Assembly (NCBI RefSeq): GCF_006345805.1
Contig: NW_021833141.1
Coordinates: 1-29,041 of the forward strand
DNA: 29,041 bases
Direction of reading: 5' to 3'
Origin: Octopus sinensis
Lineage: Eukaryota
The stretch's first letter is position 1. The number at the start of each line of letters is the position of its first letter. Position numbers and translations under genes: made by a program. Below, one piece after another: positions 737 to 28,982 of the stretch. The notes below the pieces were generated by a model. It did no database searches. It was given only the letters and a program-made list of their open reading frames with translations, and had not been told where the DNA came from.

Positions 737-1452
737 AGGCGGTGAGCTGGCAGAAACTTTAGGACGCTGGGCGATATGCCTTGTGCCTAGTGTAGAAAAG
801 AATCGTTAGCACGCGAGGGGTGGAGGCGAAATGCTAAGCGGTATTTCGTCTGCCGCTACGTTCTGAGTTCAAATTCCGCCGAGGTCCACTTTGCCTTTCA
901 TCCTTTCGGGGTCGATAAATTAAGTACCAGTTACACACTGGTGTCGATGTAATCGACTTAATACCTATGTCTGTCCTTGTTTGTCCCCTCTGTGTTTAGC
1001 CCCTTGTGGGTAATAAAGAAATAGGTATTTCGTCTGCCGTTACGTTCTGAGTTCAAATTCCGCCGAGGTCGAATTTACATTTCATCCTTTCGGGGACGAT
1101 AAATTAAGTACCAGTTACGCACTGGGGTCGATGTAATCGACTTAATACCTATGTCTGTCCTTGTTTGTCCCCTCTGTGCTTAGCCCCTTGTGGGTAGTAA
1201 AGAAATAGGTATTTCGTCTGTCTTTACGTTCTGAGTTTAAATTCCGCCGAGGATGACTTTGCCTTTCATCCTTTCGGGGTCGATAAATTTAGTACCAGTT
1301 ACGCACTGGGGTCGATGTAATCGACTTAATACCTATGTCTGTCCTTGTTTGTCCCCTCTGTGTTTAGCCCCTTGTGGGTAGTAAAGAAATAGGTATTTCG
1401 TCTGCCGTTACGTTCTGAGTTCAAATTCCGCCGGGTCGACTTTACCTTTCGT
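737..1452 (+). mobile_element. SINE-B tandem array: duplicated head plus three 184-bp body/tail units and a partial fourth
   Basis: gtatttcgtctg recurs at 841, 1025, 1209, 1393; A-box-like agctggcagaa in the head and B-box gagttcaaattc in each unit. Confidence 0.85.
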
Positions 1453-1829
1453 ATTTTCGGCAAATTGACTCGTCGACAACTTGTCTTATCTACCATTTTG
1501 TCTTACCAACATTACGAAACGAATTCTTAGCTTTCTTTAAAAGCAAGATCCACTCCAGTTCACAACATCTTCATTTCTTGGAATTATCTCCCTTGCTTGC
1601 TGTTTTCAAATTTCAAATGCACACTAGATGGAGATTTCTTTTTCAGTGTTATGAACGCTGGCATTTCGACTGTCGATATTTTGACATGTATGACGAATGT
1701 CAACATTCGTCATTTTGTCCAAATACCACCCAGTAACCAGGTACATGCAAAAACCAAACAACCCTGTTAAACCCCGTCGCCATCTTGTGTTCCATCTGAT
1801 ACACAACCGTTTGTCCCTCGACACACAAA

Positions 1830-3333: not shown

Positions 3334-3448
3334 CTAAATGCTGATCGAGTTTGGAATGTAAATCGGATCGAGATATGTGTAAGGTGGGTTCCTGGTGCTG
3401 TTTCGTTCTCGAATGATCACTCCGATCTGTTTTAAGTCGCTCCGAAAC
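3334..3448 (-). CDS. LOX last coding exon ending in NSISI* (C-terminal Ile Fe ligand)
   Basis: Acceptor tcttttag|; AA|G completes Lys; RERN...PYTYLDP...NSISI then TAG at 3336-3334. Confidence 0.95.
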
Positions 3449-4472
3449 CTAAAAGAAGAAGAGAAAAGCAATAGAAACGTCACTGGAATTAGAAGAAAAG
3501 GGAGAAGAAAAAAAACAAAAAAGAAAACGGCTGTGTGGTAAGTAGCTTGTTTACCAACCACATGGTTCCAGGTTCAGTCCCACTGCGTGGCACCTTGGGC
3601 AAGTGTCTTCTACTATAGCCTCGGGCCGACCAAAGCCTTGTGAGTGGATTTGGCAGACGGAAACTGAAAGAAGCCTGTCGTATATATGTATATATATATA
3701 TGTATATATATGTGTGTGTATATGTTTGTGTCTCTGTGATTGTCCCTCTAGCATTGCTTGACAACCGATGCTGGTGTGTTTACGTCCCCGTCACTTAGCG
3801 GTTCGGCAAAAGAGACCGATAGAATAAGTACTGGGCTTACAAAGAATAATTCCCGGGGTCGATTTGCTCGACTAAAGGCGGTGCTCCAGCATGGCCGCAG
3901 TTAAATGACTGAAACAAGTAAAAGAGTAAAGAGTAATGAAAGAAAGAAAGGAAGAAAGGAAGGAAGAAGATTAATAAAGAATGTGGATTTGCCTCATGAC
4001 TGATTTTAAAAAATCATGATTAACAAAAATAATTAAGTGACTGAGAAAAATGATTAATTGAAAAACGTGATTGTTGGAAAATAATGTTTGCAAAAAGTGA
4101 TTGGCTGCTGAGGATCATCGATTTGTAAAATGATTGATGATTATGATTTACTGAGAAAATTTAGTTGATTGGAGAGGAAACCTGAATAATCGAAGAAAAA
4201 ACCGCTTGGTTGATTAAACTGATTGATTAGCAAAAAAATAATCGATTGACAGAAATGAGATTTGAAATAATTGATTGACTGACAAAAAAAAAAAAATTGC
4301 AAGAAAATATGATCAACAAAAATTGTTCACTTGGAGAAAAAAAAACTTATGAATCGATAAAATAAAATTCAGAGATTCACAAAAATGATTGATTTACAAA
4401 AGTGATAAGTAATTATATATGAGATTTATTTTGGCTCCTTATTCTCAGATTTCGTGCGTGCACATACATATA

Positions 4473-4554
<82 letters not shown>

Positions 4555-4856
4555 TTTATGAAAGAATGGAGTTGAACGACTTGTTAACAAATTTCCTTTA
4601 TTTTCGACATATGTTTCGAAGGCTACATATTCCTAATTCCGAGGGAATAAGGAGTACATTATGCAGATTTCTCATCAGGAAAGGAACTTATGTCGACATC
4701 AAAATGCACAAAAAGCTTTTAGCTGACTTCTCCCAAGGAGCCCATGGCGATAATGAGTGTCTGTTTATAAGGAGTGACGTCAGATGTGAATTTGCTACCC
4801 AGGTATCGGTTATCTTTCGAATTATCCTTAAGATAATTCATTCAACTACTCAAATA

Positions 4857-4898
<42 letters not shown>

Positions 4899-5743
4899 TG
4901 TATTATTAAGCGTGATGTTTAAACAAGTATATTGTTCCGCTAATTTCAATTTCGGTTTATGTGCGGTTTCATGTCCTCTTATTTCCAGACAATTAGTCTG
5001 TCCTCTCTCCTAATGACATGCCAAATTTGGGAAGATCTTGATTCTTGATTTTGTCTCTCCTTCTCATATAGAGCTGCTCTCAGTTACTATTTGGGAATTG
5101 TGACACATTCTCTACAAGCTGAAATAATTTTATAAATCAACAATTTATGTTATAAAGAATAGTAAGACCGTATTTGTCTAGATTGTTCGAACGCACGCCG
5201 CTGGCCACTCAGACTTATTTCTCTTAGCACGTTTGTTTAATCTTTACATACATGTACGTATGTGTGTGCACATCTCTCTCTCTCTCTCATATATATATAT
5301 TATATATATATATATATATACTATATAGTATCTACCGGCGTTGCTCGGGTTTTGTAAGAGAAATAACTATAAAGCATTTTAGAGAGTTAAGCCAAAAATA
5401 GCAAAAAAATGCAGTAAAAATGGAAAAAAAATGATGGTAAATTTTTTTTTTAATCGTTGACTCATCGTAGACATTTTTAGAGAGTTACTTCCCTTATATA
5501 ATAGCGAAAAAAATTCATTAAAATGGAAAACAATTATGGTAAATTATTTTTTAAATCGTAGACTCATCGTAGACGCGCGCTAACACCCAGAAGGGCTCAA
5601 TATGAATCACGACTATAAGATACCCGGTTTTGGTTAAACTGCACCGCAAAATGTGGGAGTAGTTAAGAATCTAAATCGGAGTAGACAGACACACAACTTC
5701 ACTTTTATATATAAAGATATATATATATGCATGCACATACACA

Positions 5744-5787
<44 letters not shown>

Positions 5788-8700
5788 TAAGATTCTTGTT
5801 TTTCCTGTCCTTCCCTCATCGTCTCTTTCCATTCCTATGCTACCAAAACTTATCTGTTTATTGTCTTATCTGTTTCCTTCTCCAAAACAGATCCGATGAA
5901 AAACATAACAAATATTTGCAGATAAGCGCTAAGCAGACGAAAACATTTGGTTTTCATTTTGCTCTATTTACTTCCGGTTTACCGCCGCCATTCACCGTTC
6001 GCCTTCTTTATTTTCCCTTACGTGTGGACCTACCACACTGCAGAATAGGTTGCTGCACGCACGGGTTATTCATAAACATCGGGTTCCGGATTCGAGCTGC
6101 GCTGCTTGCTCGGAAATTGTATTTTCATGTTCGTCGGATAGGCTGTGGTTAATAGTAATTGAGAAGGGCTGGGTTAAAAAACACCAACAACATGGTTGAG
6201 GATATATATGAATATAGGCAGATAAGGCGGCGAGCTGGCAGAAACGTTAGCACGCCGGGCGAAATGCGTAGCCGTATTTCGTCTGCCGTTACGTTCTGAG
6301 TTCAAATTCCGCCGAGGTCGACTTTGCCTTTCATCCTTTCGGGGTCGATTAAATAAAGTACCAGTTACGCACTGGGGTCGATGTAATCGACTGAATCCCT
6401 TTGTCTGTCCTTGTTTGTCCTCTCTGTGTTTAGCTCCTTGTGTGTAGTAGAGAAATAGGTATTTCGTCTGTCGTTACGTTCTGAGTTCAAATTCCGCCGA
6501 GGTCGACTTTGTCTTTCATCCTTTCGGGATCGATTAAATAAGTACCAGTTTCGCACCGGAGTCGATATAATCGACTTAATCCCTTTGTCTGTCCTTGTTT
6601 GTCCTCTCTGTGTTTAGCCCCTTATGGGTAATAAAGAAATATATATATGAATATAGGCAGAGGCCTGACTGCATAATTAAGAAGTTTTCTTTGCAACCAC
6701 GTGCTTTCGGTTTCAATCCCGCTGCACGGTACACTGTTCAAGCGTCTTTAACTATAGCCATCGCGAACTTGGTAGTTGGAAACTGTGCGGAAACCCGACG
6801 TGTGTGGATGTATGTCTGTGTGTGTGTATACGTGCGTGCGTTGTGTGTGTGCGTGTGTTTCTGTTTGTCTGCCTGCACACATGTCTTTGGATTTCTCCCA
6901 AAGCAGTGCTGGTTTGTTTACGTCCTTGTGTCCTAGCTGTTTGGCAAAAAGTGATCGACAGAATAAGTACGAAGCTTTAGAAAAGAGTTCAGGGAACGAT
7001 TCGTTCGAGTAAACTCTCCAGGCATTGCCCCATTATGGCCGCTGTCACATGGTAGAAAGATAGAAGAATAAAAAAAAACATAAATAACGTGCTCAGCTTG
7101 GTGGGGATGGATTGGGGTGTACCCGAAAAAGGTGGGATTGTCACGAGTGGACTATCTTTGATAGCATTCGCACGATCAGGACTGAACGACGACGAATCGC
7201 TGTCTTTATCATTATTACCACCATCACCACCATCATTCAACAACTGCCCCGACCACCACTGACGCCACCATCGCCACCTTGCACGTTGCAATGTTTACAA
7301 GGTCGGTGTCCCATGTTTATTCCGAGCGATCATCACCGAATCAAAATGTTATCTCAATACACAAACTGGGAGTGGGGACACGGCTTGAGGGCAGATAACA
7401 TTGTGTGTGTGTATGTGTGTGTGTGTGTATGTGAGAGAGAGAGAGAGAGTGAATGTGTCTGTGCGTATATGCATGCTTGCATGTGTGCGTATATTATATA
7501 TATATACGTGAGTGTGTGTAAATATACATACATATAGATCGTTAGCCACTACACACATGTTTTCTCTCCTTGTTTTCGGTGTCCCTTTCTGTAGAAGAGC
7601 ATAGGCTCGAAACGTAAAAGACTTTTTCTATTCCTGAGCGTTATACTAATACATCTGTTTGTTTTGTACACCACCTGTCTTCATCTTTTGTTGTTTTTTT
7701 TTTGTAAACTCTCCCTCTATATATATATATTCTGATTATATCCATCATTTTCTAATTAGTCCAAAGTATATGTAGACATCATAAACAGTGTGACCTCGCT
7801 TCTATGGAGGTCCATTGCTGAGAGGGGGTTCTGTTTGGGGGATCAAATATATCTTGTTGTACTTACTTGTTCACTATCGGTATAGCTTTCGGATCAAATA
7901 TATACTGTATTTCGAAGTCTCCCAAAGAATTGGTTCCTTTCGAGCTGAGAATTTTGGTAACAGTCATGATGTCCAAAGTTGTTCTTTTGTCAGGTAACAA
8001 CTTCAATATGTCTTCTTCTGTACAGGGACTCTGGAAAATATCAGAGAGGAATTACATTTTTAGTCGATAATAAACAAATGACTGCAACGTAAATGCGTGT
8101 GTGTGTGGAAATACAAGTTGTTGGTTGTGTACAGTGAAATATAATAAGAATAGCAATGATAGAAAAGTTAGTCCGAGGTAATGGAGGTATCTTTTCTTTA
8201 TTAATTATAAGAGATTTAAAAAGTCTGAATTATTCCATTACGTTCCTCATCCACTCATTTCCCCCTGTCTTTGTTCCCTTTTCGTGACCACTCGCCTATA
8301 CTCTGGCACCTCCAGCATGCTGTTGATACCACCTGGTTGAATAACGTTGCCATAGGAATCGAAATTGTAAAGATTTCAATCGGCTACTGTTGAAGGACTT
8401 AGACTTTTGTATGTCCGTCTCTACTGCGTTGTTGTTTTTATTCTAAGTCTTCGTAGTTCCTCGTTTTTTTAACACGTGACATCTTCTCTCTCTCTCTCTC
8501 TCTCTCTTATTTTCTCTTCCTCTTTACCTCTTCTAACAAGAGACGGTAGCAGACCACCTCCACCAATATCTGCACACCTGTTTCTCCCGCTCTCATCACA
8601 ATCTCTCATCACTCATGTTCACCTTTAACTTCTGCTGATTTAATGCTTTCACACCAAAACGTGATAAAAATAACAAAAAAAAGAACTCTGAAAACTTCTT

Positions 8701-9820: not shown

Positions 9821-11352
9821 ATCCTGGCACTCCATCGGTTGCGACGACGAGGGTTCCAGTTGATCCGATCAACGGAACAGCCCACTCGTGAAATTAACGT
9901 GCAAGTGGCTGAGTACTCCACAGACGCGTGTACCCTTAGCGTAGTACTCAGGAAGATTCAGCGTGAGAAAGAATGCACCAAGACTGACCCTTTGAATTAC
10001 AGATAAAATTCCTTTTTGCCTGCTGAGCGGAGTGGAGCCACGCGCCACTGTGGATCGAACTGACGATCGTGTGAACCGAATACCCTAACCACTAAAGTAC
10101 GCGCCTTCATGCACACACACTCGCGCGCGCGCATACATATATCTATAAACACCCTCTGCCCATAGACACACGATGGGTCCTCCGTCAGTTTTGACGCTGA
10201 GCAATCAATTTTCGACAAAAAGAATTACGAACTCATAAATTAATATCTAAGTGGTTGGGTATTCCGCAGACATGTATACTTTCAACGTAAATCTCCGGCA
10301 GAATCAGTATGGCTTAATGTGTAACAAAGCCGAACCTTTTAATTACAGCCACAAACCCATTAATCTGAATCAGTCGAGTTTCTGCAGTTTTCTCCTATTC
10401 GGAGACTGTCCACCACCAACTCTCTCTCTCTATCTCTATCTATCTCTCTCTCTTTCTGTCTCTCTCTCTCTATCTATCTATCTTTTACTCTCTCTTTCTC
10501 TCTCTCTATCTCTTTTTTATCTCTTTGTCTCTCTCTTTCTCTTTCTCTCTCTATCTGTCTTTCTCTCTCTCTCTCTCTTTTTCTCTTTCTCTCTCTTTTT
10601 CTCTCTCTATATCTCTCTCTCTCTCTCTCTATCGCTCTATTTTTTCTTTCTTTCTCTCTCTTTCTCTCTCTATCTCTCTCTCTCTCTCTCTTTACAGCCA
10701 TCATTTTGACAGTCTTCACAATGTTCAAGAGGAATATTAACCGCGTTCATCTGAGCCATCTCCCAGAATTGTGGACCATGAAATCACCATCAGCACGAAA
10801 CCAATACAAAACTAAAAACAGAAGAAAACAAAAATAATTGCAGAGACATCATAAAGAGGAAAACGGTTACCTTGTCTGTAGGGACCGGCCCCTTCAAAAA
10901 GGCCGGATAATTGGCGGGAAAACCGTACTCATCGTATTGGGGGAAGTTCGACGAGGCGTGGCCTACACTACACGTGAATATTATGGATGTCAAGATTAGA
11001 ACGAGGTCCTTGACCGTTTCTATGCAGCCTTTGCCGTCTTTCATTGGAATTCCCTGTTAATAAAGAGATTAAAGGATTAGTGGGAACAATATCTTGTAAA
11101 ACAACGGTGTATGTACGTATGTGTGGAGGGGGAGTTATATTATATATATCTCCCTAATCTCCCTATTATATATATATATATATATATATATACCCCTGTT
11201 TATTTCTGTATTCCTTTCTGTCGAAGAGCGTAGGCTCGAAACGTAAAAGACTTTCTTACTTTCCGGAGCGTTAAACTAATACATCTGTTTCTTTACACAC
11301 CCGTCTTCGTCTTTTGTTTTTGTAAATTCTCACTATATTATATTATATATAT

Positions 11353-25861: not shown

Positions 25862-28800
25862 GCTCTCTCTCGCTCTCTCTCGCTCTCTCTCGCTCTCTCT
25901 CTCTCTCTCGCTCGCTTTTGTCCCGATAATTCTCAGCTTTTTCAATATTTTATGAAGCGCTGTGGCTTAATGGTTAGTGCGTTAGGTTCATAAAATTAAA
26001 GAAGGGTTTCCCTTCTTCAACCAGGATGCAGATTGCGCTCTTCAGCAAGACTCTTTATTTCACGTCACTCCAGCCTACTCCGCTGAAAAGGAGTAACAGC
26101 TAAGTGCTGATGCATCTCTCTCTCTCTCTCTCTCTCTACTCCCCCCTCTCTCTCTCCCTTTACCTCTCTCTTTCTGCCCTTCAGTTACCCCATTCTGGAT
26201 GTTACTCTGGTTCACGGGTGGGAGAACCAACAAGACGTCGATGTCTGCTCGTGACTACACAGGCAGCAAAAACAATTTGCGAAGGCCTGGTACACGTTAC
26301 CCGAGTCATTGCTATACTTTTTAAACCCGCGAGCATGCTTTAACGGGTCACGATTTCATTCGACTCTACCCCTGGGTGGTTCAAAAGTAGGCGGGCCCCA
26401 CGCTTTTGTTTTCACGTTTCACTAATAAACCGAAACATCGTTATTTTCAGCCATAGAATCAAAACACCATGTGGAAGCCCGCTTTGGCGTCTTCCTAGCA
26501 GAAAGTCAAAAGAAACTGCGCACACTAAAGCGAACTCACAAGATGAAAGGGTTAATATATCTGTCTGTTCGTGACATTGTTTTTAACATGTTAAAAGTTG
26601 GGCCGCGTTAAACATTGGGGTTAATTCACTGGTGTTAGTTGAAGCTGTGTGTTGGCTTAGCATTTTCTAAACCATGTTTATAGGCCTCGCCCAGTATTAT
26701 TTATGGGATGCGTCCACGTCTACGCGCCTATACAAAGATGGTTTTGTATCATTCCAGCTGTTTCAATTAGGAAATGGTACGATGAAAGCATTCTTTAATT
26801 ACCATAATATCTTTAATTCACTAATTAACGCTATTTATTGATAACCCACTCTCAGTATTTATATTTTTCTGAGATGTAGCAACGTCTAACCGCCATTGCG
26901 GAAGTACACTAATTGCGCATGAGTATTAAGTGCTGTCCTTGAATGCCGTTTAATTCTTGCATCAAGGGCATGGATTGTTTTTTTTTTATCTCGATTCTGC
27001 GCAACGGTAAAGTCATGTGATATGATTATGTGGATAATTGGTCCACTAGTGTCGTTTTTGTAATGGAAAACGGTTTATTAAGTATTATTGATGATTACCA
27101 TTGAAGGCAATTACTAAATAATGGTTGGAATGTTATCAAGGTTTCGGAGCACTTTAGCAGTGGGGCAACGCGGTCATTAGGACGTCAATCCTGGTATTCG
27201 ATAAAGAGAGTTAGCGGAAGACGTGGATGATAATAAGCAAGGACCAGTTGATGAGAATATTGAGAACGATTTATTAAATAACTAGCAGTATCTCCCGCCG
27301 TTGTTCGGGTTTGTTTCGACCTTTAGAATTGGAATTTTTGAAAAGTAAAAATTTTGCATTATGTAGCTTGTTATTCTCTTTAAGTGAACATTTTTCTGGT
27401 TGAAATACACCGAAAAATGGCGACACAGCAGTAAAGAAAATCGTAAAAAATAAAGATTTTCATAGAAAAAAAAACACCTTTTTGATCCAAATAATTTTTG
27501 GTGTTAACATGGTCCGATTTGAATTTTTTTTTCTATGGAATAAAGAGCAAGCCTTCTTCTATCATACTTTCAATTTTGGTCAACTTGCTCTGCAGGGTCT
27601 CGGAGGAGATAGTGCTAGTTGAAGCCTACCAAACCTGCCACGCGCAGACAACTTCAGCTTTATATAGAGAGAGATAGGTCGGGAGGCTAACAGGGGTTCG
27701 TAGCACTCTAGCAGTAGGCTGATCTGCTGTGTCGCCATTTTTCGGTGTATTTCAACCAGAAAAATGTTCACTTAAAGAGAATAACAATCTACATAATGCA
27801 ACATTTTTACTTTTCAAAAATTCCAATTCTAAAGGGTCAAAACAAACCCGAGCAACGCCGGGCGATACTGCTAGTGATTGGTAAATCAAGTCGAGGAATT
27901 TAGATGAGTCTTTGGTGTAGGAACATTGGTGCGTGCCGAGCAACGGAGAGAATGGTTTGAAGTACTTCTTCATGTTCTGAGATCGAATCCCGCCGAGTTC
28001 GACTTTTCCTTTCATTCTTTTGGAGTAGATGTTTTTATTTGGATCCACACCGGAATGTATTTTTTTTTTTTTTTTGCCAAATCTTAAAAACAAATGCATG
28101 AACTAAGGGAAATAACTCAAAGGAACTATAGCAGGAAATTCAACAAATAGGTTACAGCGTGACATGTTGGACACAGTATGTAAAGAAAAAAAGTGTCAAC
28201 CTAGCGGTAAACGTATGAGTCCTTCAAAAAGACGGGAGATAATACATTTTTTTAAATATTTTTTTCGCAAACTAATCTCTCTGCTTCGAGAAAAGGCAAG
28301 CTGATCTTTGTTTGGAAGTCAAAGAGACAACTATGAACATATTTCAGCCTTTTAGACATCATCAGCATAGTGTTCTCTAAAGCAAGCTGGCAAATCATTT
28401 TTTTTTCTGTTATTTTTTATTGTATCCTCCATTATCCATTTATAGACGCAGGAGTGGCTGTGTGGTAAGTAGCTTGCTAACCAACCACATGGTTCCGGGT
28501 TCAGTCCCACTGCGTGGCATCTTGGGCAAGTGTCTTCTGCTATAGCCCCGGGCCGACCAATGCCTTGTGAGTGGATTTGGTAGACGGAAACTGAAAGAAC
28601 CTGTCGTATATATGTATATATATATGTGTGTGGTGTGTGTGTGTGTGTTTTGTGTTTGTCCCCCTAGCATTGCTGACAACCGATGCTGGTGTGTTTACGT
28701 CCCCGTCACTTAACGGTTCGGCAAAAGAGACCGATAAATAAGTACTGGCTTACAAAGAATAAGTCCCCGGGTCGATTTGCTCGACTAAAGGCGGTGCTCC

Positions 28801-28982
28801 AGCATGGCCGCAATCAAATGACTGAAACAAGTAAAAGAGTATCTGACTCTTTAATTAGTTGGACATATTTTGTGGTTGTTAGGAGTTTAATTGAAATGGT
28901 TGACATAAAAACTATACTCACTCCTTGCTGTTTGAAGAACTCTGGAAAGCAACCGTCGACGTCAATTCGCCACTCTTTTACT
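3334..28982 (-). CDS. Lipoxygenase (animal arachidonate-LOX / AOS-LOX-like catalytic domain), 3' six exons; 5' part lies beyond the window
   Basis: Six exons with GT-AG sites and matching phases (61+106+92+183+164+115 nt) give [242 protein letters not shown] hallmarks: YxxRDD, D-x-E-(L/I)-Q-x-W, IFTxSxxHAxxNxxQYD, RN...PYxYLxP...NSISI. Confidence 0.95.
3529..3935 (+). mobile_element. SINE-A, near full length
   Basis: Colinear with copies at 17574, 20067 and 28445. Confidence 0.9.
3975..4410. repeat. Degenerate A-rich minisatellite built on a TGATTGA core
   Basis: Repeated aaaa(t/g)tgattga(c/t)tga-like units with irregular spacing. Confidence 0.5.
4553..4859 (-). mobile_element. Penelope-like pLTR remnant carrying a hammerhead, flanked on both sides by (TA)n
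   Basis: On the minus strand TGACGTCA (4782-4775) and TATAAA (4769-4764) precede the HHR; (TA)n at about 4477-4552 and 4860-4893. The PLE assignment rests on the known PLE-HHR association; no RT/GIY-YIG ORF is present. Confidence 0.6.
4596..4684 (-). ncRNA. Type I hammerhead ribozyme, canonical core
   Basis: Minus strand: tttc-CTGATGA-[gaa..ctgcata..tcct.attcc-ctc-ggaat.agga..tatgtag..ttc]-GAAA-c-atat-g-TC^gaaa. Stem I tttc/gaaa, extended stem II, palindromic stem III ACATATGT, GUC triplet at 4608-4606. Confidence 0.8.
5321..5717 (-). mobile_element. Non-autonomous Helitron, second subfamily
   Basis: A|TC start at 5718/5717 (tctttatatataaaagtgaagttg); near-identical 3' hairpin aacccgagcaacgccgg; degenerate terminus (tatag); internal duplication of about 100 bp. 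Confidence 0.75.
6223..6640 (+). mobile_element. SINE-B dimer with 21-bp TSD
   Basis: atatatatgaatataggcaga at 6202-6222 and 6641-6661; body restarts at 6274 and 6459. Confidence 0.9.
6653..7070 (+). mobile_element. Old, diverged SINE-A-like copy
   Basis: Colinear similarity to SINE-A head, TG tract and tail. Confidence 0.6.
7535..7717 (+). mobile_element. Family C: about 190-bp Penelope-like / retrozyme-like element
   Basis: Homologous to 11193-11333, 21641-21839 and 23483-23681; TA-rich flanks; contains a minimal HHR. Confidence 0.7.
7585..7620 (+). ncRNA. Minimal hammerhead-like motif (CUGUAGA core)
   Basis: cttt-CTGTAGA-a-gagc-atag-gctc-GAAA-cg-TA^aaag. Confidence 0.6.
7867..8030 (-). 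CDS. LOX penultimate exon: [15 protein letters not shown]...[10 protein letters not shown]
   Basis: Acceptor tattttccag|, donor |gtaagt; 164 nt, phase 0 to 2. Confidence 0.92.
9270..9450 (+). mobile_element. SINE-A 5' half, diverged
   Basis: ggcaccttggcgaaatgtcttctactttagccccgggccga matches the SINE-A body. Confidence 0.7.
9826..10107 (-). mobile_element. SINE-E, internally deleted
   Basis: Reverse complement matches the head and the 3' half of 17106-17468. Confidence 0.7.
10406..10692. repeat. (CT)n/(CTAT) polypyrimidine microsatellite
   Basis: Direct inspection. Confidence 0.95.
10871..11053 (-). CDS. LOX exon with Fe-ligand His/Asn (HASSN)
   Basis: Acceptor ttattaacag|, donor |gtaacc; 183 nt, phase 0/0; [21 protein letters not shown] aligns with ALOX5 [21 protein letters not shown]. 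Confidence 0.95.
11193..11333 (+). mobile_element. Family C element, 5'-truncated, within (TA)n
   Basis: Minimal HHR at 11214-11249: cttt-CTGTCGA-a-gagc-gtag-gctc-GAAA-cg-TA^aaag. Confidence 0.7.
11950..12271 (-). mobile_element. tRNA-derived SINE-D
   Basis: Head gaaggcgcatggctcagtggttagagc (A box), then a central-domain-like tgttcttgagcaagacatttt; diverged copy at 25954-26103. Confidence 0.75.
12320..12530 (+). mobile_element. SINE-A 3' half, diverged
   Basis: tgcttgacaaccggtgctggtgtgtttacgtc...tgactgaaacaagtaaa. Confidence 0.75.
12575..12876 (-). mobile_element. SINE-A, 5'-truncated, young
   Basis: Reverse complement nearly identical to the SINE-A body and tail. Confidence 0.9.
13230..13430 (+). 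mobile_element. Family C-related element with minimal HHR (CCGACGA core)
   Basis: gttt-CCGACGA-a-gagc-tcc-gctc-GAAA-cg-TT^aaac at 13303-13337; long (TA)n on the left. Confidence 0.6.
13436..13872 (-). mobile_element. RTE-clade LINE 3' fragment (frameshifted)
   Basis: Minus-strand translation FGHMEW.DEE.MVR / [27 protein letters not shown] / [14 protein letters not shown] matches the RTE C-terminal WFGH...RGRPR.RW.D...DR..WR pattern. Confidence 0.8.
14087..14464. mobile_element. Tc1/mariner-type MITE
   Basis: 26-bp TIRs cact(act/tgc)gtcagaaattaattagcac; TA on both sides. Confidence 0.8.
14522..14572 (-). mobile_element. SINE-A tail fragment
   Basis: Reverse complement of ggtgctccagcatggccgcag...aagtaaaaga, diverged. 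Confidence 0.5.
14626..14800 (+). mobile_element. SINE-A 5' half, diverged
   Basis: Head plus gggccgaccaaagc...ggaaactgaaagaag. Confidence 0.7.
15860..16635. mobile_element. hAT/Charlie-like MITE containing a SINE-B dimer
   Basis: Imperfect TIRs cagtggttcccagcc / ggtcgagaactacta; 8-bp TSD gtttatga / gtttataa (7 of 8 match). Confidence 0.65.
16190..16593 (-). mobile_element. SINE-B heterodimer with 14-bp TSD
   Basis: aagacacccagcaa at 16176-16189 and 16594-16607; two bodies with different tails. Confidence 0.88.
17106..17468 (+). mobile_element. tRNA-derived SINE-E
   Basis: A box tggcctagtggttag, B box ggtttcgattccc; second copy at 9826-10107. Confidence 0.8.
17495..18133 (-). mobile_element. 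RLE-type (R2/R4/NeSL-group) non-LTR retrotransposon C-terminal fragment split by SINE-A
   Basis: [33 protein letters not shown] | [17 protein letters not shown] fits the C-terminal restriction-like endonuclease region. Confidence 0.7.
17574..17993 (+). mobile_element. SINE-A, full length
   Basis: ggcgcaggag head to aagagta tail. Confidence 0.92.
18537..19173. repeat. (TATG)n microsatellite with recurrent TACGTCTG interruptions
   Basis: Direct inspection. Confidence 0.95.
19575..19735 (+). mobile_element. SINE-B, diverged
   Basis: gtcgactttgcctttcat...taagtaccagttacgcactggggt. Confidence 0.7.
19835..20045 (+). mobile_element. SINE-B (B2 tail), diverged
   Basis: agctggcagaatcgttagc head; ggtcttgtgctagaattagaaag tail. 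Confidence 0.65.
20067..20477 (+). mobile_element. SINE-A, full length
   Basis: Colinear with the other copies. Confidence 0.92.
20608..20699 (-). CDS. LOX exon: (E)[30 protein letters not shown]
   Basis: First AG after a long pyrimidine tract (cgaag|), donor |gtaagt; phase 1 to 0; keeps the YY-x8-D spacing of ALOX5 (YYEGDQVVEED). Confidence 0.9.
21049..21118. repeat. (AAT)n microsatellite
   Basis: Direct inspection. Confidence 0.9.
21641..21839 (-). mobile_element. Family C element with minimal HHR (21740-21775; stem III C to T change)
   Basis: Reverse complement: cttt-CTGTAGA-a-gagc-gtag-gctc-GAAA-tg-TA^aaag; (TA)n on the left, (CT)n(TA)n on the right. Confidence 0.7.
22048..22160. repeat. 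16-bp minisatellite ATATATACAAACATAC
   Basis: About five to six tandem units. Confidence 0.8.
22330..22830. repeat. Trinucleotide low-complexity blocks (GGY/GCT, then CAT/CAC) around a (CT)n tract
   Basis: Direct inspection. Confidence 0.8.
22885..23045 (+). mobile_element. SINE-A 5' half
   Basis: ggcgcagg head, ggttcagtccc B box. Confidence 0.75.
23301..23411. mobile_element. 111-bp foldback MITE at a TA site
   Basis: Arms 23301-23339 and 23370-23411 are near-perfect inverted repeats; TA on both sides. Confidence 0.65.
23483..23681 (-). mobile_element. Family C element with intact minimal HHR (23573-23608)
   Basis: Reverse complement: cttt-CTGTAGA-a-gagc-gtag-gctc-GAAA-cg-TA^aaag. Confidence 0.72.
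23860..23965 (-). CDS. LOX exon: [35 protein letters not shown]
   Basis: Acceptor ttcctttgcag|, donor |gtaagg; YPFRDD motif; phase 0 to 1. Confidence 0.93.
24055..24579. mobile_element. Unclassified about 500-bp repeat F, copy 1, between (ATT)n tracts
   Basis: Colinear with 24969-25440; no ORF or tRNA head recognised. Confidence 0.7.
24621..24832 (+). mobile_element. SINE-B monomer (B2 tail)
   Basis: aggcggtgagc head; ggccttgtgcttccagtagaaaag tail followed by (ATA)n. Confidence 0.8.
24833..24968. repeat. Long inverted repeat (about 60-bp arms, 15-nt loop)
   Basis: Arms 24833-24892 and 24908-24967 differ at five positions. Confidence 0.9.
24969..25465. mobile_element. Repeat F, copy 2
   Basis: Homologous to 24055-24525; followed by a long (ATT)n. 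Confidence 0.7.
25566..25810 (-). mobile_element. R4/Dong-like non-LTR 3' end adjoining (TAA)n
   Basis: Minus-strand ...GIGALGT / [25 protein letters not shown] matches the R4-clade C-terminus; the 3' UTR runs into (TAA)n at 25467-25565. Confidence 0.7.
25954..26103 (+). mobile_element. SINE-D-like, diverged
   Basis: tggcttaatggttagtgc head; cagcaagactctttatttcacg domain. Confidence 0.55.
27282..27674 (-). mobile_element. Non-autonomous Helitron, full length (393 bp)
   Basis: A|TC at 27675/27674; hairpin; CTAG|T at 27282/27281. Confidence 0.88.
27724..27874 (+). mobile_element. Helitron 3' 151 bp, inverted relative to its neighbour
   Basis: Hairpin plus CTAG (27871-27874) followed by T. 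Confidence 0.85.
28445..28841 (+). mobile_element. SINE-A, full length
   Basis: Colinear with the other copies. Confidence 0.92.
28922..28982 (-). CDS. LOX exon (first in window): [20 protein letters not shown]
   Basis: Acceptor ttctgtag|, donor |gtgagt; phase 2 to phase 0; position matches the LOX segment preceding LPNY. Confidence 0.85.

What the first reader, a model, noticed from the sequence alone, without database searches (positions are those of the whole stretch)
4596..4684. Canonical type I hammerhead ribozyme in sense within the last intron of the LOX pre-mRNA
Seen (minus strand): complete core CUGAUGA...GAAA...GUC, stem I uuuc/gaaa with a distal uuccuu/aaggaa option, and an unusually long multi-segment stem II of about 54 nt (gaa/uuc, cugcaua/uauguag, uccu/agga, auucc/ggaau). 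Stem III is only 2 bp closed by AUAU, and ACAUAUGU is a perfect palindrome. Established: PLE-associated HHRs with short palindromic stem III cleave as dimers (work from the de la Pena and Breaker labs). Inference: it could cut nascent LOX RNA about 1.15 kb upstream of the final acceptor, possibly in a concentration-dependent (dimer) manner.
Basis: partly seen in the sequence, partly recalled or inferred. Interest (0 to 1): 0.8.

Follow-up and report, generated by a model that had tools for sequence, protein, structure and literature searches.

The report
Retrotransposon hammerhead copy in lipoxygenase intron
The hammerhead ribozyme motif is real and lies in sense in an intron of a lipoxygenase gene, but it is one slightly damaged copy among at least 658 of the tail of a Penelope-like jumping gene, not a regulator made for this gene.

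Summary
Observation confirmed. On the minus strand, 4686->4593, there is a complete type I hammerhead: CUGAUGA, a 54-nt stem II, GAAA, a 2-bp stem III inside the palindrome ACAUAUGU, and GUC^G cut between 4606 and 4605. It lies 1,157 nt upstream of the acceptor of the last lipoxygenase exon. Rfam Hammerhead_1 matches over its full length but below threshold (22.7 vs 34 bits).

The motif belongs to a 237-nt stretch (4784->4548). That stretch is the 5'-truncated end region of a Hydra-clade Penelope-like retrotransposon inserted head-to-head into a (TA)n microsatellite. The 2.7-Gb octopod genome holds at least 658 near-identical copies. Longer copies run upstream into an RT plus GIY-YIG frame with the Hydra-clade diagnostic motifs. 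Distant relatives carry differently sequenced hammerheads at the same place.

The window copy is solitary, with no tandem partner. It has a private 5-nt deletion in stem I, and the catalytic fold is predicted to lie 6.2 kcal/mol above its best fold, against 2.2 for a typical copy. Published single Penelope hammerheads do not cleave detectably. No read evidence could be obtained.

Verdict: an ordinary transposon fragment, so low interest. Other agents of this scan reached the same Hydra-clade reading on other DNA of this genome.

The parts
4593..4686 (-). Type I hammerhead motif. Stem I 5' strand 4686-4679, CUGAUGA 4678-4672, stem II 4671-4618, GAAA 4617-4614, stem III palindrome 4614-4607, C17 4606, predicted cut 4606/4605, stem I 3' strand 4605-4593.
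   Evidence: Sequence; descriptor scan; Rfam RF00163 at 22.7 bits, E=0.0011 in the narrow scan.
4548..4784 (-). A 237-nt, 5'-truncated end region of a Hydra-clade Penelope-like retrotransposon ('unit A'). It contains the hammerhead.
   Evidence: 93-96% identical copies across the genome with variable 5' ends and a constant 3' end. It is collinear with the region downstream of the RT/GIY-YIG frame in longer copies.
4785..4860 (+). Inverted, 5'-truncated fragment of the same element's terminal tail module ('X', about its last 80 nt), joined head-to-head to unit A.
   Evidence: Window 4780-4903 matches X positions 78-206. X follows unit A in the same orientation in most longer and diverged copies.
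4465..4547 (.). (TA)n microsatellite flanking the insertion on one side (the target).
   Evidence: Sequence. The Hydra clade inserts into (TA)n (PMC8557442).
4861..4895 (.). (TA)n microsatellite flanking the insertion on the other side.
   Evidence: Sequence.
3334..3448 (-). Last coding exon of a lipoxygenase gene (..[26 protein letters not shown], then stop). The acceptor AG is at 3450-3449.
   Evidence: phmmer to 5-lipoxygenase residues 654-691, E=7e-5; sequence.
10862..11023 (-). Upstream lipoxygenase exon (Pfam PF00305 positions 521-574).
   Evidence: 32.2 bits, above the cut-off.
7866..8006 (-). Candidate penultimate lipoxygenase exon (LPDxR..LS..LG..F pattern). Not verified.
   Evidence: Pattern read by eye in the translation. 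No Pfam or PDB hit on its own.
4689..4695 (-). Upstream segment CGACAUA. In the predicted lowest-energy fold of the 106-nt context it pairs with UAUGUCG (4611-4605) across the cleavage site.
   Evidence: Minimum-free-energy fold. The segment is conserved, with wobble-compatible changes, in the family alignment.

Best explanation
The hammerhead is a passenger. A Hydra-clade Penelope-like retrotransposon (PLE) integrated into a (TA)n microsatellite inside the intron before the last exon of a lipoxygenase gene, presumably by target-primed reverse transcription. It left a 5'-truncated 237-nt end piece (4784->4548, same strand as the gene). An inverted ~76-nt piece of the element's tail (4785-4860) sits head-to-head with it. 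In this element family a type I hammerhead with a long stem II and a 2-bp palindromic helix III sits between the RT/GIY-YIG reading frame and the 3' end. It is kept by the active elements, probably to process multimeric or tandem element transcripts as a two-copy (dimeric) ribozyme. The window copy is a dead, solitary fragment. It has no partner for the dimer, and it carries a private 5-nt deletion in stem I that is predicted to misfold the junction. It is therefore expected to cleave LOX pre-mRNA poorly or not at all. Shown here: repeat membership, truncation pattern, (TA)n target, inverted partner, coding partner with Hydra-clade motifs, conservation of the hammerhead within and between families, and the private lesions. 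Inferred: the retrotransposition mechanism, the role of the hammerhead for the element, and the low activity of this copy.
For: There are 1,536 first-look candidates for 4560-4720, and the 40 scored copies are 93-96% identical, often as adjacent inverted pairs. A 29-nt core plus stem II pattern gives 658 matches at up to 2 mismatches, against 0 for the reversed control. Copies start at variable unit positions (1, 8, 22, 29, 36, 59-66, 93, 99), and all reach unit position 236-237. Downstream of that point they continue into (TA)n or into the tail module X. Longer copies share at least 2 kb upstream, and one genomic copy has an uninterrupted 787-aa frame. That frame has 39 homologues, the best from Argonauta hians at 37% identity. 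Their alignment shows RWK, DKT, YRDD, FLDV, a CxCX5C linker, VVY..YIG with no cysteines between them, and CxxC..E..N..CxH. These are the features that define the Hydra clade, together with short single-ORF elements, (TA)n targets and canonical hammerheads (PMC8557442). Among 39 copies, including subfamilies at 73-90% identity, 33 keep all 13 core positions. The minor-allele fraction is 0.010 in the core, 0.040 across the hammerhead and 0.103 in the flanks. Relatives in four other element families have hammerheads between the ORF stop and (TA)n, each with different helix sequences and a short helix III. That helix III is palindromic in three of them (ACUGCAGU, AUAAAUUUAU, ACAAUUGU). The catalytic fold lies 2.2 kcal/mol above the best fold in a typical copy and 6.2 in the window copy. 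The probability of the stem I closing pair is 0.50 versus 0.003. The predicted homodimer of the typical copy forms the double hammerhead, and that of the window copy does not. In published tests a single PLE hammerhead showed no detectable cleavage, and dimers and trimers showed low cleavage (PMC4209133).
Against: Cleavage was not tested, and no RNA reads could be laid, so residual activity of this copy in vivo is not excluded. All 13 core nucleotides of this copy are intact. Folding energies do not capture tertiary contacts or help from proteins. Pfam and PDB searches did not recognise the RT/EN frame, except for a sub-threshold GIY-YIG hit at 20.5 bits. The clade assignment therefore rests on motif inspection, on language-model neighbours that carry RVT_1, GIY-YIG and HTH_animal, and on the published description. 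Within the genome no compensatory double changes were seen, only conservation.
Confidence: 0.88

Rival explanations
1. One reading: the intronic hammerhead cleaves nascent LOX pre-mRNA, as a monomer or as a concentration-dependent dimer, and so modulates the gene's output.
For: It is on the sense strand, inside the intron, 1,157 nt upstream of the last acceptor. All core nucleotides are intact. The genome transcribes or holds hundreds of copies with the same palindromic helix III, which could in principle pair in trans.
Against: It is one of at least 658 copies of a transposon tail and is not locus-specific. No second copy exists in the window. The private 5-nt stem I deletion is predicted to misfold it both as monomer and as dimer. 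The 8-bp palindrome gives about -7 kcal/mol, roughly 10 uM. Single PLE hammerheads are inactive in vitro (PMC4209133). A vertebrate survey reports hammerhead retrozymes depleted from introns, which suggests such insertions are selected against rather than co-opted (bioRxiv 10.64898/2026.07.22.740005, abstract).
Confidence: 0.05
2. It is a copy of a non-autonomous hammerhead element (a non-LTR retrozyme or a PLE-mobilised SINE) rather than a truncated autonomous PLE.
For: The fragment is short and non-coding. Octopus genomes hold abundant short hammerhead-bearing repeats, according to earlier notes of this scan. Animal retrozymes are argued to derive from PLE terminal regions.
Against: The 237-nt unit is collinear with the region downstream of the RT/EN frame in longer copies, and its 5' ends are scattered as expected for truncation. 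It is not in a tandem array, and there is only one hammerhead in the window.
Confidence: 0.06
3. It is a chance match to the hammerhead consensus in AT-rich intron DNA.
For: Rfam gives no hit at gathering score, and no hit at E<=10 in the 500-nt scan.
Against: There is a full-length Rfam alignment at E=0.0011 in the narrow scan. The core is conserved in 33 of 39 copies, including diverged subfamilies. Hammerheads with different helices sit at the same position in distant relatives.
Confidence: 0.01

Closest known systems
Hammerhead ribozymes of Hydra-clade Penelope-like elements (Craig, Yushenova, Rodriguez, Arkhipova 2021, PMC8557442)
   Same: Short single-ORF element with a C-terminal GIY-YIG endonuclease. 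It has the RWK, DKT and CxCX5C motifs and no CCHH. It inserts into (TA)n, forms 5'-truncated inverted partners, and carries a hammerhead near the 3' end.
   Different: This is an octopod family. I could not check whether it is among the few mollusc families the paper mentions. Its stem II is unusually long (54 nt). The window holds only a 237-nt dead end piece.
Minimal / dimer-type type I hammerheads of metazoan PLEs and satellite repeats (Cervera & de la Pena 2014, PMC4209133)
   Same: Type I topology, a helix III of 1-2 bp with a small palindromic loop, location in PLE terminal regions, and an architecture that needs two copies to build a stable helix III.
   Different: The paper describes helix II of 4-8 bp. 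Here stem II is a 54-nt multi-segment hairpin, and family stem I is 4 bp plus a 3x3 internal loop plus 6 bp. The window copy lacks a tandem partner.
Conserved intronic hammerheads of amniotes (Rfam HH9 RF02275 and HH10 RF02277; from my own knowledge, not tested beyond the Rfam scan)
   Same: A type I hammerhead in sense inside an intron of a protein-coding gene.
   Different: Those are single-copy, orthologously conserved loci. This one is a recent multi-copy transposon fragment. Neither Rfam model matched.
Animal non-LTR retrozymes (Cervera & de la Pena 2020, PMC7229834; Li, Clavereau, Pollet 2026 preprint)
   Same: Type I hammerheads related to PLE terminal regions.
   Different: Retrozymes are tandem arrays that yield small circular RNAs. 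Here there is a single truncated unit, collinear with an autonomous element.

Membership tests
Hammerhead ribozyme, type I (Rfam RF00163) | Conserved core: C3 U4 G5 A6 N7 G8 A9, G12 A13 A14, A15.1-U16.1, H17 | tested here: met
   CUGAUGA, GAAA and ..GUC are present in the right order.
Hammerhead ribozyme, type I (Rfam RF00163) | Three helices around the core, open at helix I | tested here: inconclusive
   The helices can be drawn. In this copy, however, the catalytic fold lies 6.2 kcal/mol above the best fold and the stem I closing pair has probability 0.003. A typical family copy gives 2.2 kcal/mol and 0.50.
Hammerhead ribozyme, type I (Rfam RF00163) | Score at or above Rfam's gathering threshold (34 bits) | tested here: not met
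   22.7 bits, with a 50-nt insertion in stem II. No hit at gathering score.
Hammerhead ribozyme, type I (Rfam RF00163) | Site-specific self-cleavage after H17 | not testable with these tools
   It needs an in vitro or in vivo assay.
Dimer-type metazoan / PLE hammerhead (Cervera & de la Pena 2014) | Helix III of 1-2 bp capped by a small palindromic loop | tested here: met
   ACAUAUGU is a 2-bp stem with an AUAU loop and a perfect palindrome. The definition is in PMC4209133.
Dimer-type metazoan / PLE hammerhead (Cervera & de la Pena 2014) | A second copy nearby (tandem) to form the active dimer | tested here: not met
   There is only one hammerhead and one unit copy in the 29-kb window.
Dimer-type metazoan / PLE hammerhead (Cervera & de la Pena 2014) | Residence in the terminal region of a Penelope-like element | tested here: met
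   The unit is collinear with the region downstream of the RT/GIY-YIG frame.
Hydra clade of Penelope-like elements (PMC8557442) | RWK motif present and DKG changed to DKT | tested here: met
   The alignment A1 consensus shows RxRWKAF and ADKT, with D29 and K30 invariant. The octopus copies read RIRWL.
Hydra clade of Penelope-like elements (PMC8557442) | Linker CxCX5C upstream of a C-terminal GIY-YIG, no CCHH inside the GIY-YIG core, and CxxC / CxH flanking the conserved E and N | tested here: met
   C569, C571 and C577 form the linker. NVVYQA..YIG has no cysteines. RCxLCLxEK..LNKR..CRH follows. Pfam GIY-YIG scores 20.5 bits, just under the cut-off.
Hydra clade of Penelope-like elements (PMC8557442) | Short element (<3 kb) with a single ORF, insertion into (TA)n, and a hammerhead present | tested here: met
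   About 2.4 kb of open frame is followed by about 0.7 kb of tail. (TA)n lies at the 3' junction in most copies examined here and in relatives. Hammerheads are seen.
Hydra clade of Penelope-like elements (PMC8557442) | Placement inside the Hydra clade in an RT phylogeny with reference PLEs | not tested
Conserved intronic hammerheads (HH9/HH10 type) | Single-copy locus conserved at the orthologous intron across species | tested here: not met
   The genome holds at least 658 copies. No HH9 or HH10 hit was found. No orthologue comparison was possible.
Non-LTR retrozyme | Tandem repeats that each carry a hammerhead | tested here: not met
   A single unit, with an inverted tail fragment beside it.

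The most novel reading that the evidence does not exclude
Despite its lesions, this sense-strand intronic copy, and the many similar copies that must lie in other octopus introns, may be cleaved in vivo. Cleavage could be helped by host factors or by pairing of the palindromic helix III with abundant element transcripts. Penelope-like insertions would then act as weak, expression-dependent attenuators of host pre-mRNAs.
Probability: 0.04. Interest if true: 0.55.

Novelty: new member of a known kind. Interest (0 to 1): 0.15.

Why it matters
Mostly it does not: this is a routine transposon fragment in an intron. It has two modest values. First, it links one abundant octopod hammerhead repeat to its autonomous partner, a Hydra-clade PLE with an RT/GIY-YIG frame. 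It also shows that this clade keeps a hammerhead at the same position with quite different helices, which argues that the ribozyme serves the element. Second, it gives a natural pair of sequences, a typical copy and the window copy with a stem I deletion. These could be used to test how stem I geometry matters for dimer-type hammerheads.

Tried and rejected
- **Rfam, wider scans.** The scan at gathering score on the whole window, and the scan at E<=10 on 4400-4900, found no hammerhead. Only the 116-nt scan did. A scan of four relatives' loci (28.6 kb) also found none at E<=1, so I used a descriptor script.
- **RT/EN frame.** Pfam found nothing above threshold and PDB sequence searches found nothing.
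- **Empty site or paralogous intron.** The left flank 4100-4455 is unique in the genome. The right flank 4905-5250 is an old ~74% repeat. No comparison was therefore possible.
- **RNA evidence.** One local script read the whole window file as a BLAST subject for two queries taken from elsewhere.
- **Truncated copies that begin at the predicted cleavage site.** I looked for these as a possible trace of in vivo cleavage. None of the 5' ends seen falls there, but the sample is small.
- **Penultimate exon.** The candidate at 7866-8006(-) got no Pfam or PDB support on its own.
- **Other lipoxygenase exons.** Pfam on nine larger ORFs of the window found none.
- **Lysyl oxidase reading of 'LOX'.** Rejected: PF01186 matches only contig C2, not this window.

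Full report
**1. The observation**

The minus strand of 4593-4686 reads as follows: uucc-uuuc, CUGAUGA, a 54-nt stem II, GAAA, CAUAUG, UC^GAAA-auaaa-ggaa. In coordinates:
- CUGAUGA is 4678-4672.
- Stem II is 4671-4618.
- GAAA is 4617-4614.
- The palindrome ACAUAUGU (helix III, a 2-bp stem with an AUAU loop) is 4614-4607.
- C17 is 4606, and the predicted cut falls between 4606 and 4605.

A simple hammerhead descriptor run over both strands of the 29-kb window returns this site and no other.

Rfam finds nothing at gathering score in the whole window. It also finds nothing at E<=10 in 4400-4900. When only 4585-4700 is scanned, Hammerhead_1 (RF00163) aligns over its whole model at 4600-4684(-). 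The alignment has a 50-nt insertion in stem II, scores 22.7 bits against a gathering score of 34, and has E=0.0011. The motif is therefore real, but sub-threshold for the curated family because of the long stem II.

**2. Gene context**

'LOX' here is a lipoxygenase, not lysyl oxidase.
- PF01186 (lysyl oxidase) matches only another contig.
- PF00305 (lipoxygenase) matches window 10862-11023(-), profile positions 521-574.
- Window 3337-3450(-) aligns end to end with the last 38 residues of arachidonate 5-lipoxygenase (3v98_A residues 654-691, E=7e-5).
- A pyrimidine tract plus AG ends at 3449, so the last exon starts at 3448. That is 1,157 nt downstream of the predicted cut.

The hammerhead is therefore in sense in the intron before the last exon. 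A candidate penultimate exon at 7866-8006(-) fits the lipoxygenase pattern by eye, but it has no Pfam or PDB support on its own. The 5' end of the intron is not verified.

**3. What the sequence belongs to**

The genome is 2.72 Gb with chromosome-scale contigs numbered to at least C30. The window is a whole 29-kb unplaced contig.

Copy number and ends:
- Searching 4560-4720 against the genome gives 1,536 first-look candidates. All 40 scored are 93-96% identical, and many form adjacent inverted pairs.
- A 29-nt pattern covering the core and the 5' strand of stem II has 658 matches at up to 2 mismatches. The reversed control has 0.
- The repeat in the window spans 4548-4784.
- In other loci the copies begin at scattered unit positions (1, 8, 22, 29, 36, 37, 59-66, 93, 99). 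All of them reach unit position 236-237.
- Beyond that point they continue either straight into (TA)n or into a ~165-nt tail module 'X' that itself ends at (TA)n.

Layout in the window, read on the plus strand:
- (TA)n at 4465-4547;
- unit A reversed at 4548-4784;
- the last ~76 nt of X at 4785-4860;
- (TA)n at 4861-4895.

This is a head-to-head pair of 5'-truncated pieces inside a TA microsatellite.

**4. The coding partner**

- Several loci share at least 0.7-2 kb upstream of the unit.
- One locus shows a 2.05-kb copy with an inverted 173-bp end piece attached upstream.
- A segment of the upstream region has 634 candidates in the genome, at 87-98% identity. One natural copy has an uninterrupted 787-aa frame.
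- Pfam and PDB sequence searches do not recognise the frame, apart from a sub-threshold GIY-YIG hit at 20.5 bits.
- The large protein search returns 39 homologues. The best are from the octopod Argonauta hians at 37% identity.
- Language-model neighbours carry RVT_1, GIY-YIG, HTH_animal and DUF8422.

The alignment of 24 of these proteins (A1) shows RxRWKAF, ADKT, KDHKPNF..RLINP, FDI..FYPSI, FDVTMGS, GLYRDDGL and NFLDVTL..KPN..SNHP. It also shows a CxCX5C linker, NVVYQA..YIG.T with no cysteines between the two halves, and RCxLCLxEK..LNKR..CRH.

Craig et al. 2021 (PMC8557442, section 11) define the Hydra clade of Penelope-like elements by these same features:
- RWK is present.
- DKG is changed to DKT.
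- The linker is CxCX5C.
- CCHH is absent.
- CxxC and CxH flank the conserved E and N.
- The elements are under 3 kb with a single ORF.
- Almost all families insert into (TA)n.
- Canonical hammerheads are readily detected.

The same paper describes inverted 5'-truncated copies and one-sided tails as typical of PLE insertions. The window fragment is therefore the dead 3' end of a Hydra-clade PLE.

**5. Is the hammerhead a conserved part of the element?**

Within the genome, I aligned 39 copies, including subfamilies at 73-90% identity (A2).
- 33 of the 39 keep all 13 core positions.
- The mean minor-allele fraction is 0.010 for the core, 0.040 for the hammerhead columns and 0.103 for the flanks.
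- There are no compensatory double changes. Some distal stem II pairs are broken in whole subfamilies. The within-genome evidence is therefore conservation, not covariation.

Between families the evidence is stronger. Elements whose proteins are only about 35% identical carry a type I hammerhead between the ORF stop and the (TA)n junction, with entirely different helices:
- Argonauta hians (L063): CUGAGGA, a 95-nt stem II with 11 closing pairs after an A.C mismatch, helix III ACUGCAGU, cut after GUA.
- Sample ERZ21867824 (L064-L066): CUGAUGA, a 55-nt stem II with about 10 closing pairs, helix III AUAAAUUUAU.
- Sample ERZ25067862 (L068, L069): compact versions.
- A second Argonauta locus (L067): a degenerate version with helix III ACAAUUGU.

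A short helix III is the common theme. It is palindromic in L063, L064-L066 and L067, but not clearly so in the compact L068 and L069 versions. This matches the published description of metazoan and PLE hammerheads, which need two copies to form a stable helix III (PMC4209133).

**6. State of the window copy**

Against the family, this copy has three private changes:
- a 5-nt deletion in the 5' strand of stem I (family GUUCCUUGCCUUUC, window GUUCC-----UUUC);
- a C-to-U change that turns one stem II pair into G.U;
- a U-to-C change in the terminal loop.

In the family, stem I is 4 bp, a 3x3 internal loop, then 6 bp. The deletion lets UUCCUUU pair continuously with AAAGGAA in a shifted register.

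| Measure | Typical copy | Window copy |
|---|---|---|
| Catalytic fold above best fold (kcal/mol) | 2.2 | 6.2 |
| Probability of stem I closing pair | 0.50 | 0.003 |
| Probability of helix III | about 0.03 | about 0.03 |

The low helix III probability in both is what a dimer-type ribozyme should show.

The predicted homodimer of the typical copy forms the double hammerhead, with an 8-bp intermolecular helix III. The homodimer of the window copy does not. The palindrome alone is worth about -7 kcal/mol, roughly 10 uM, so pairing in trans on a nascent intron is implausible. There is no second copy in the window.

In the 106-nt context, the lowest-energy fold pairs an upstream CGACAUA (4695-4689) with UAUGUCG (4611-4605), across the cut site.

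In the published tests, a single PLE hammerhead gave no detectable cleavage, and dimers and trimers gave only low cleavage (PMC4209133).

**7. What could not be done**

No expression or RNA-end evidence was obtained. The run search listed only assembled contigs, none on record as RNA. I worked beside those places afterwards. No empty site or paralogous intron exists in the assembly for comparison.

**8. Verdict**

It is not supported as a LOX-specific device. The hammerhead is a passenger on a truncated Hydra-clade Penelope-like element, it is solitary, and it is structurally impaired.

Earlier notes of this scan on other pieces of the same genome reached the same Hydra-clade, (TA)n, truncated-copy reading. 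I read them after reaching mine, and they are not independent evidence. Another note names the species Octopus sinensis, which I did not check.

Interest is low.

Noticed in passing
window 4689-4695 with 4605-4611 (minus strand): An upstream CGACAUA can pair with UAUGUCG across the cleavage site. This pairing is part of the lowest-energy fold of the 106-nt context. The segment is conserved in the family, with wobble-compatible changes. It could be an 'off' conformation of the element's ribozyme.
   Followed up: partly
G000 loci L005, L006, L007, L012 and L045-L062 versus L002, L013, L019, L020: The element has two kinds of 3' end. Unit A may run straight into (TA)n, or unit A may be followed by a ~165-nt tail module X that ends at (TA)n. 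The junction is at a TA-rich spot (..AACTTATAT|TTTTAAAATA..).
   Followed up: partly
L028:686-3046 and one search hits: The RT/GIY-YIG region of the family has 634 candidate copies at 87-98% identity, and one natural copy has an uninterrupted 787-aa frame. The family therefore looks young. Pfam does not recognise the protein at all.
   Followed up: partly
window 4905-5250: The right flank of the insertion is itself an older dispersed repeat, with 322 first-look candidates at about 71-78% identity.
   Followed up: no
window 825-1460; 1838-2215; 3529-3925; 28433-28840: Other repeat families are shared with the unrelated loci fetched. 825-1460 looks like a tandem array with a period of about 184 bp. 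3529-3925 and 28433-28840 are two copies of one family next to CA/TA microsatellites, and 1838-2215 is a more diverged copy.
   Followed up: no
L065:1550-1667 (ENA ERZ21867824 contig): A 5S rRNA-like match (34.5 bits, just under the gathering score of 38) lies about 830 nt upstream of the PLE reading frame of a relative. It could be a 5S-derived module or a neighbouring SINE.
   Followed up: no
L063:5892-5986 (Argonauta hians): A near-perfect 95-nt hairpin lies just beyond the (TA)n at the 3' end of the Argonauta element. Rfam matched it on both strands only as a spurious miRNA-like hit.
   Followed up: no
G000 contigs C9 and C18: Many lipoxygenase exon matches cluster on C9 (at least six places) and C18 (three places). 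This suggests a tandemly expanded lipoxygenase family. The window is an unplaced 29-kb contig carrying one more copy.
   Followed up: no
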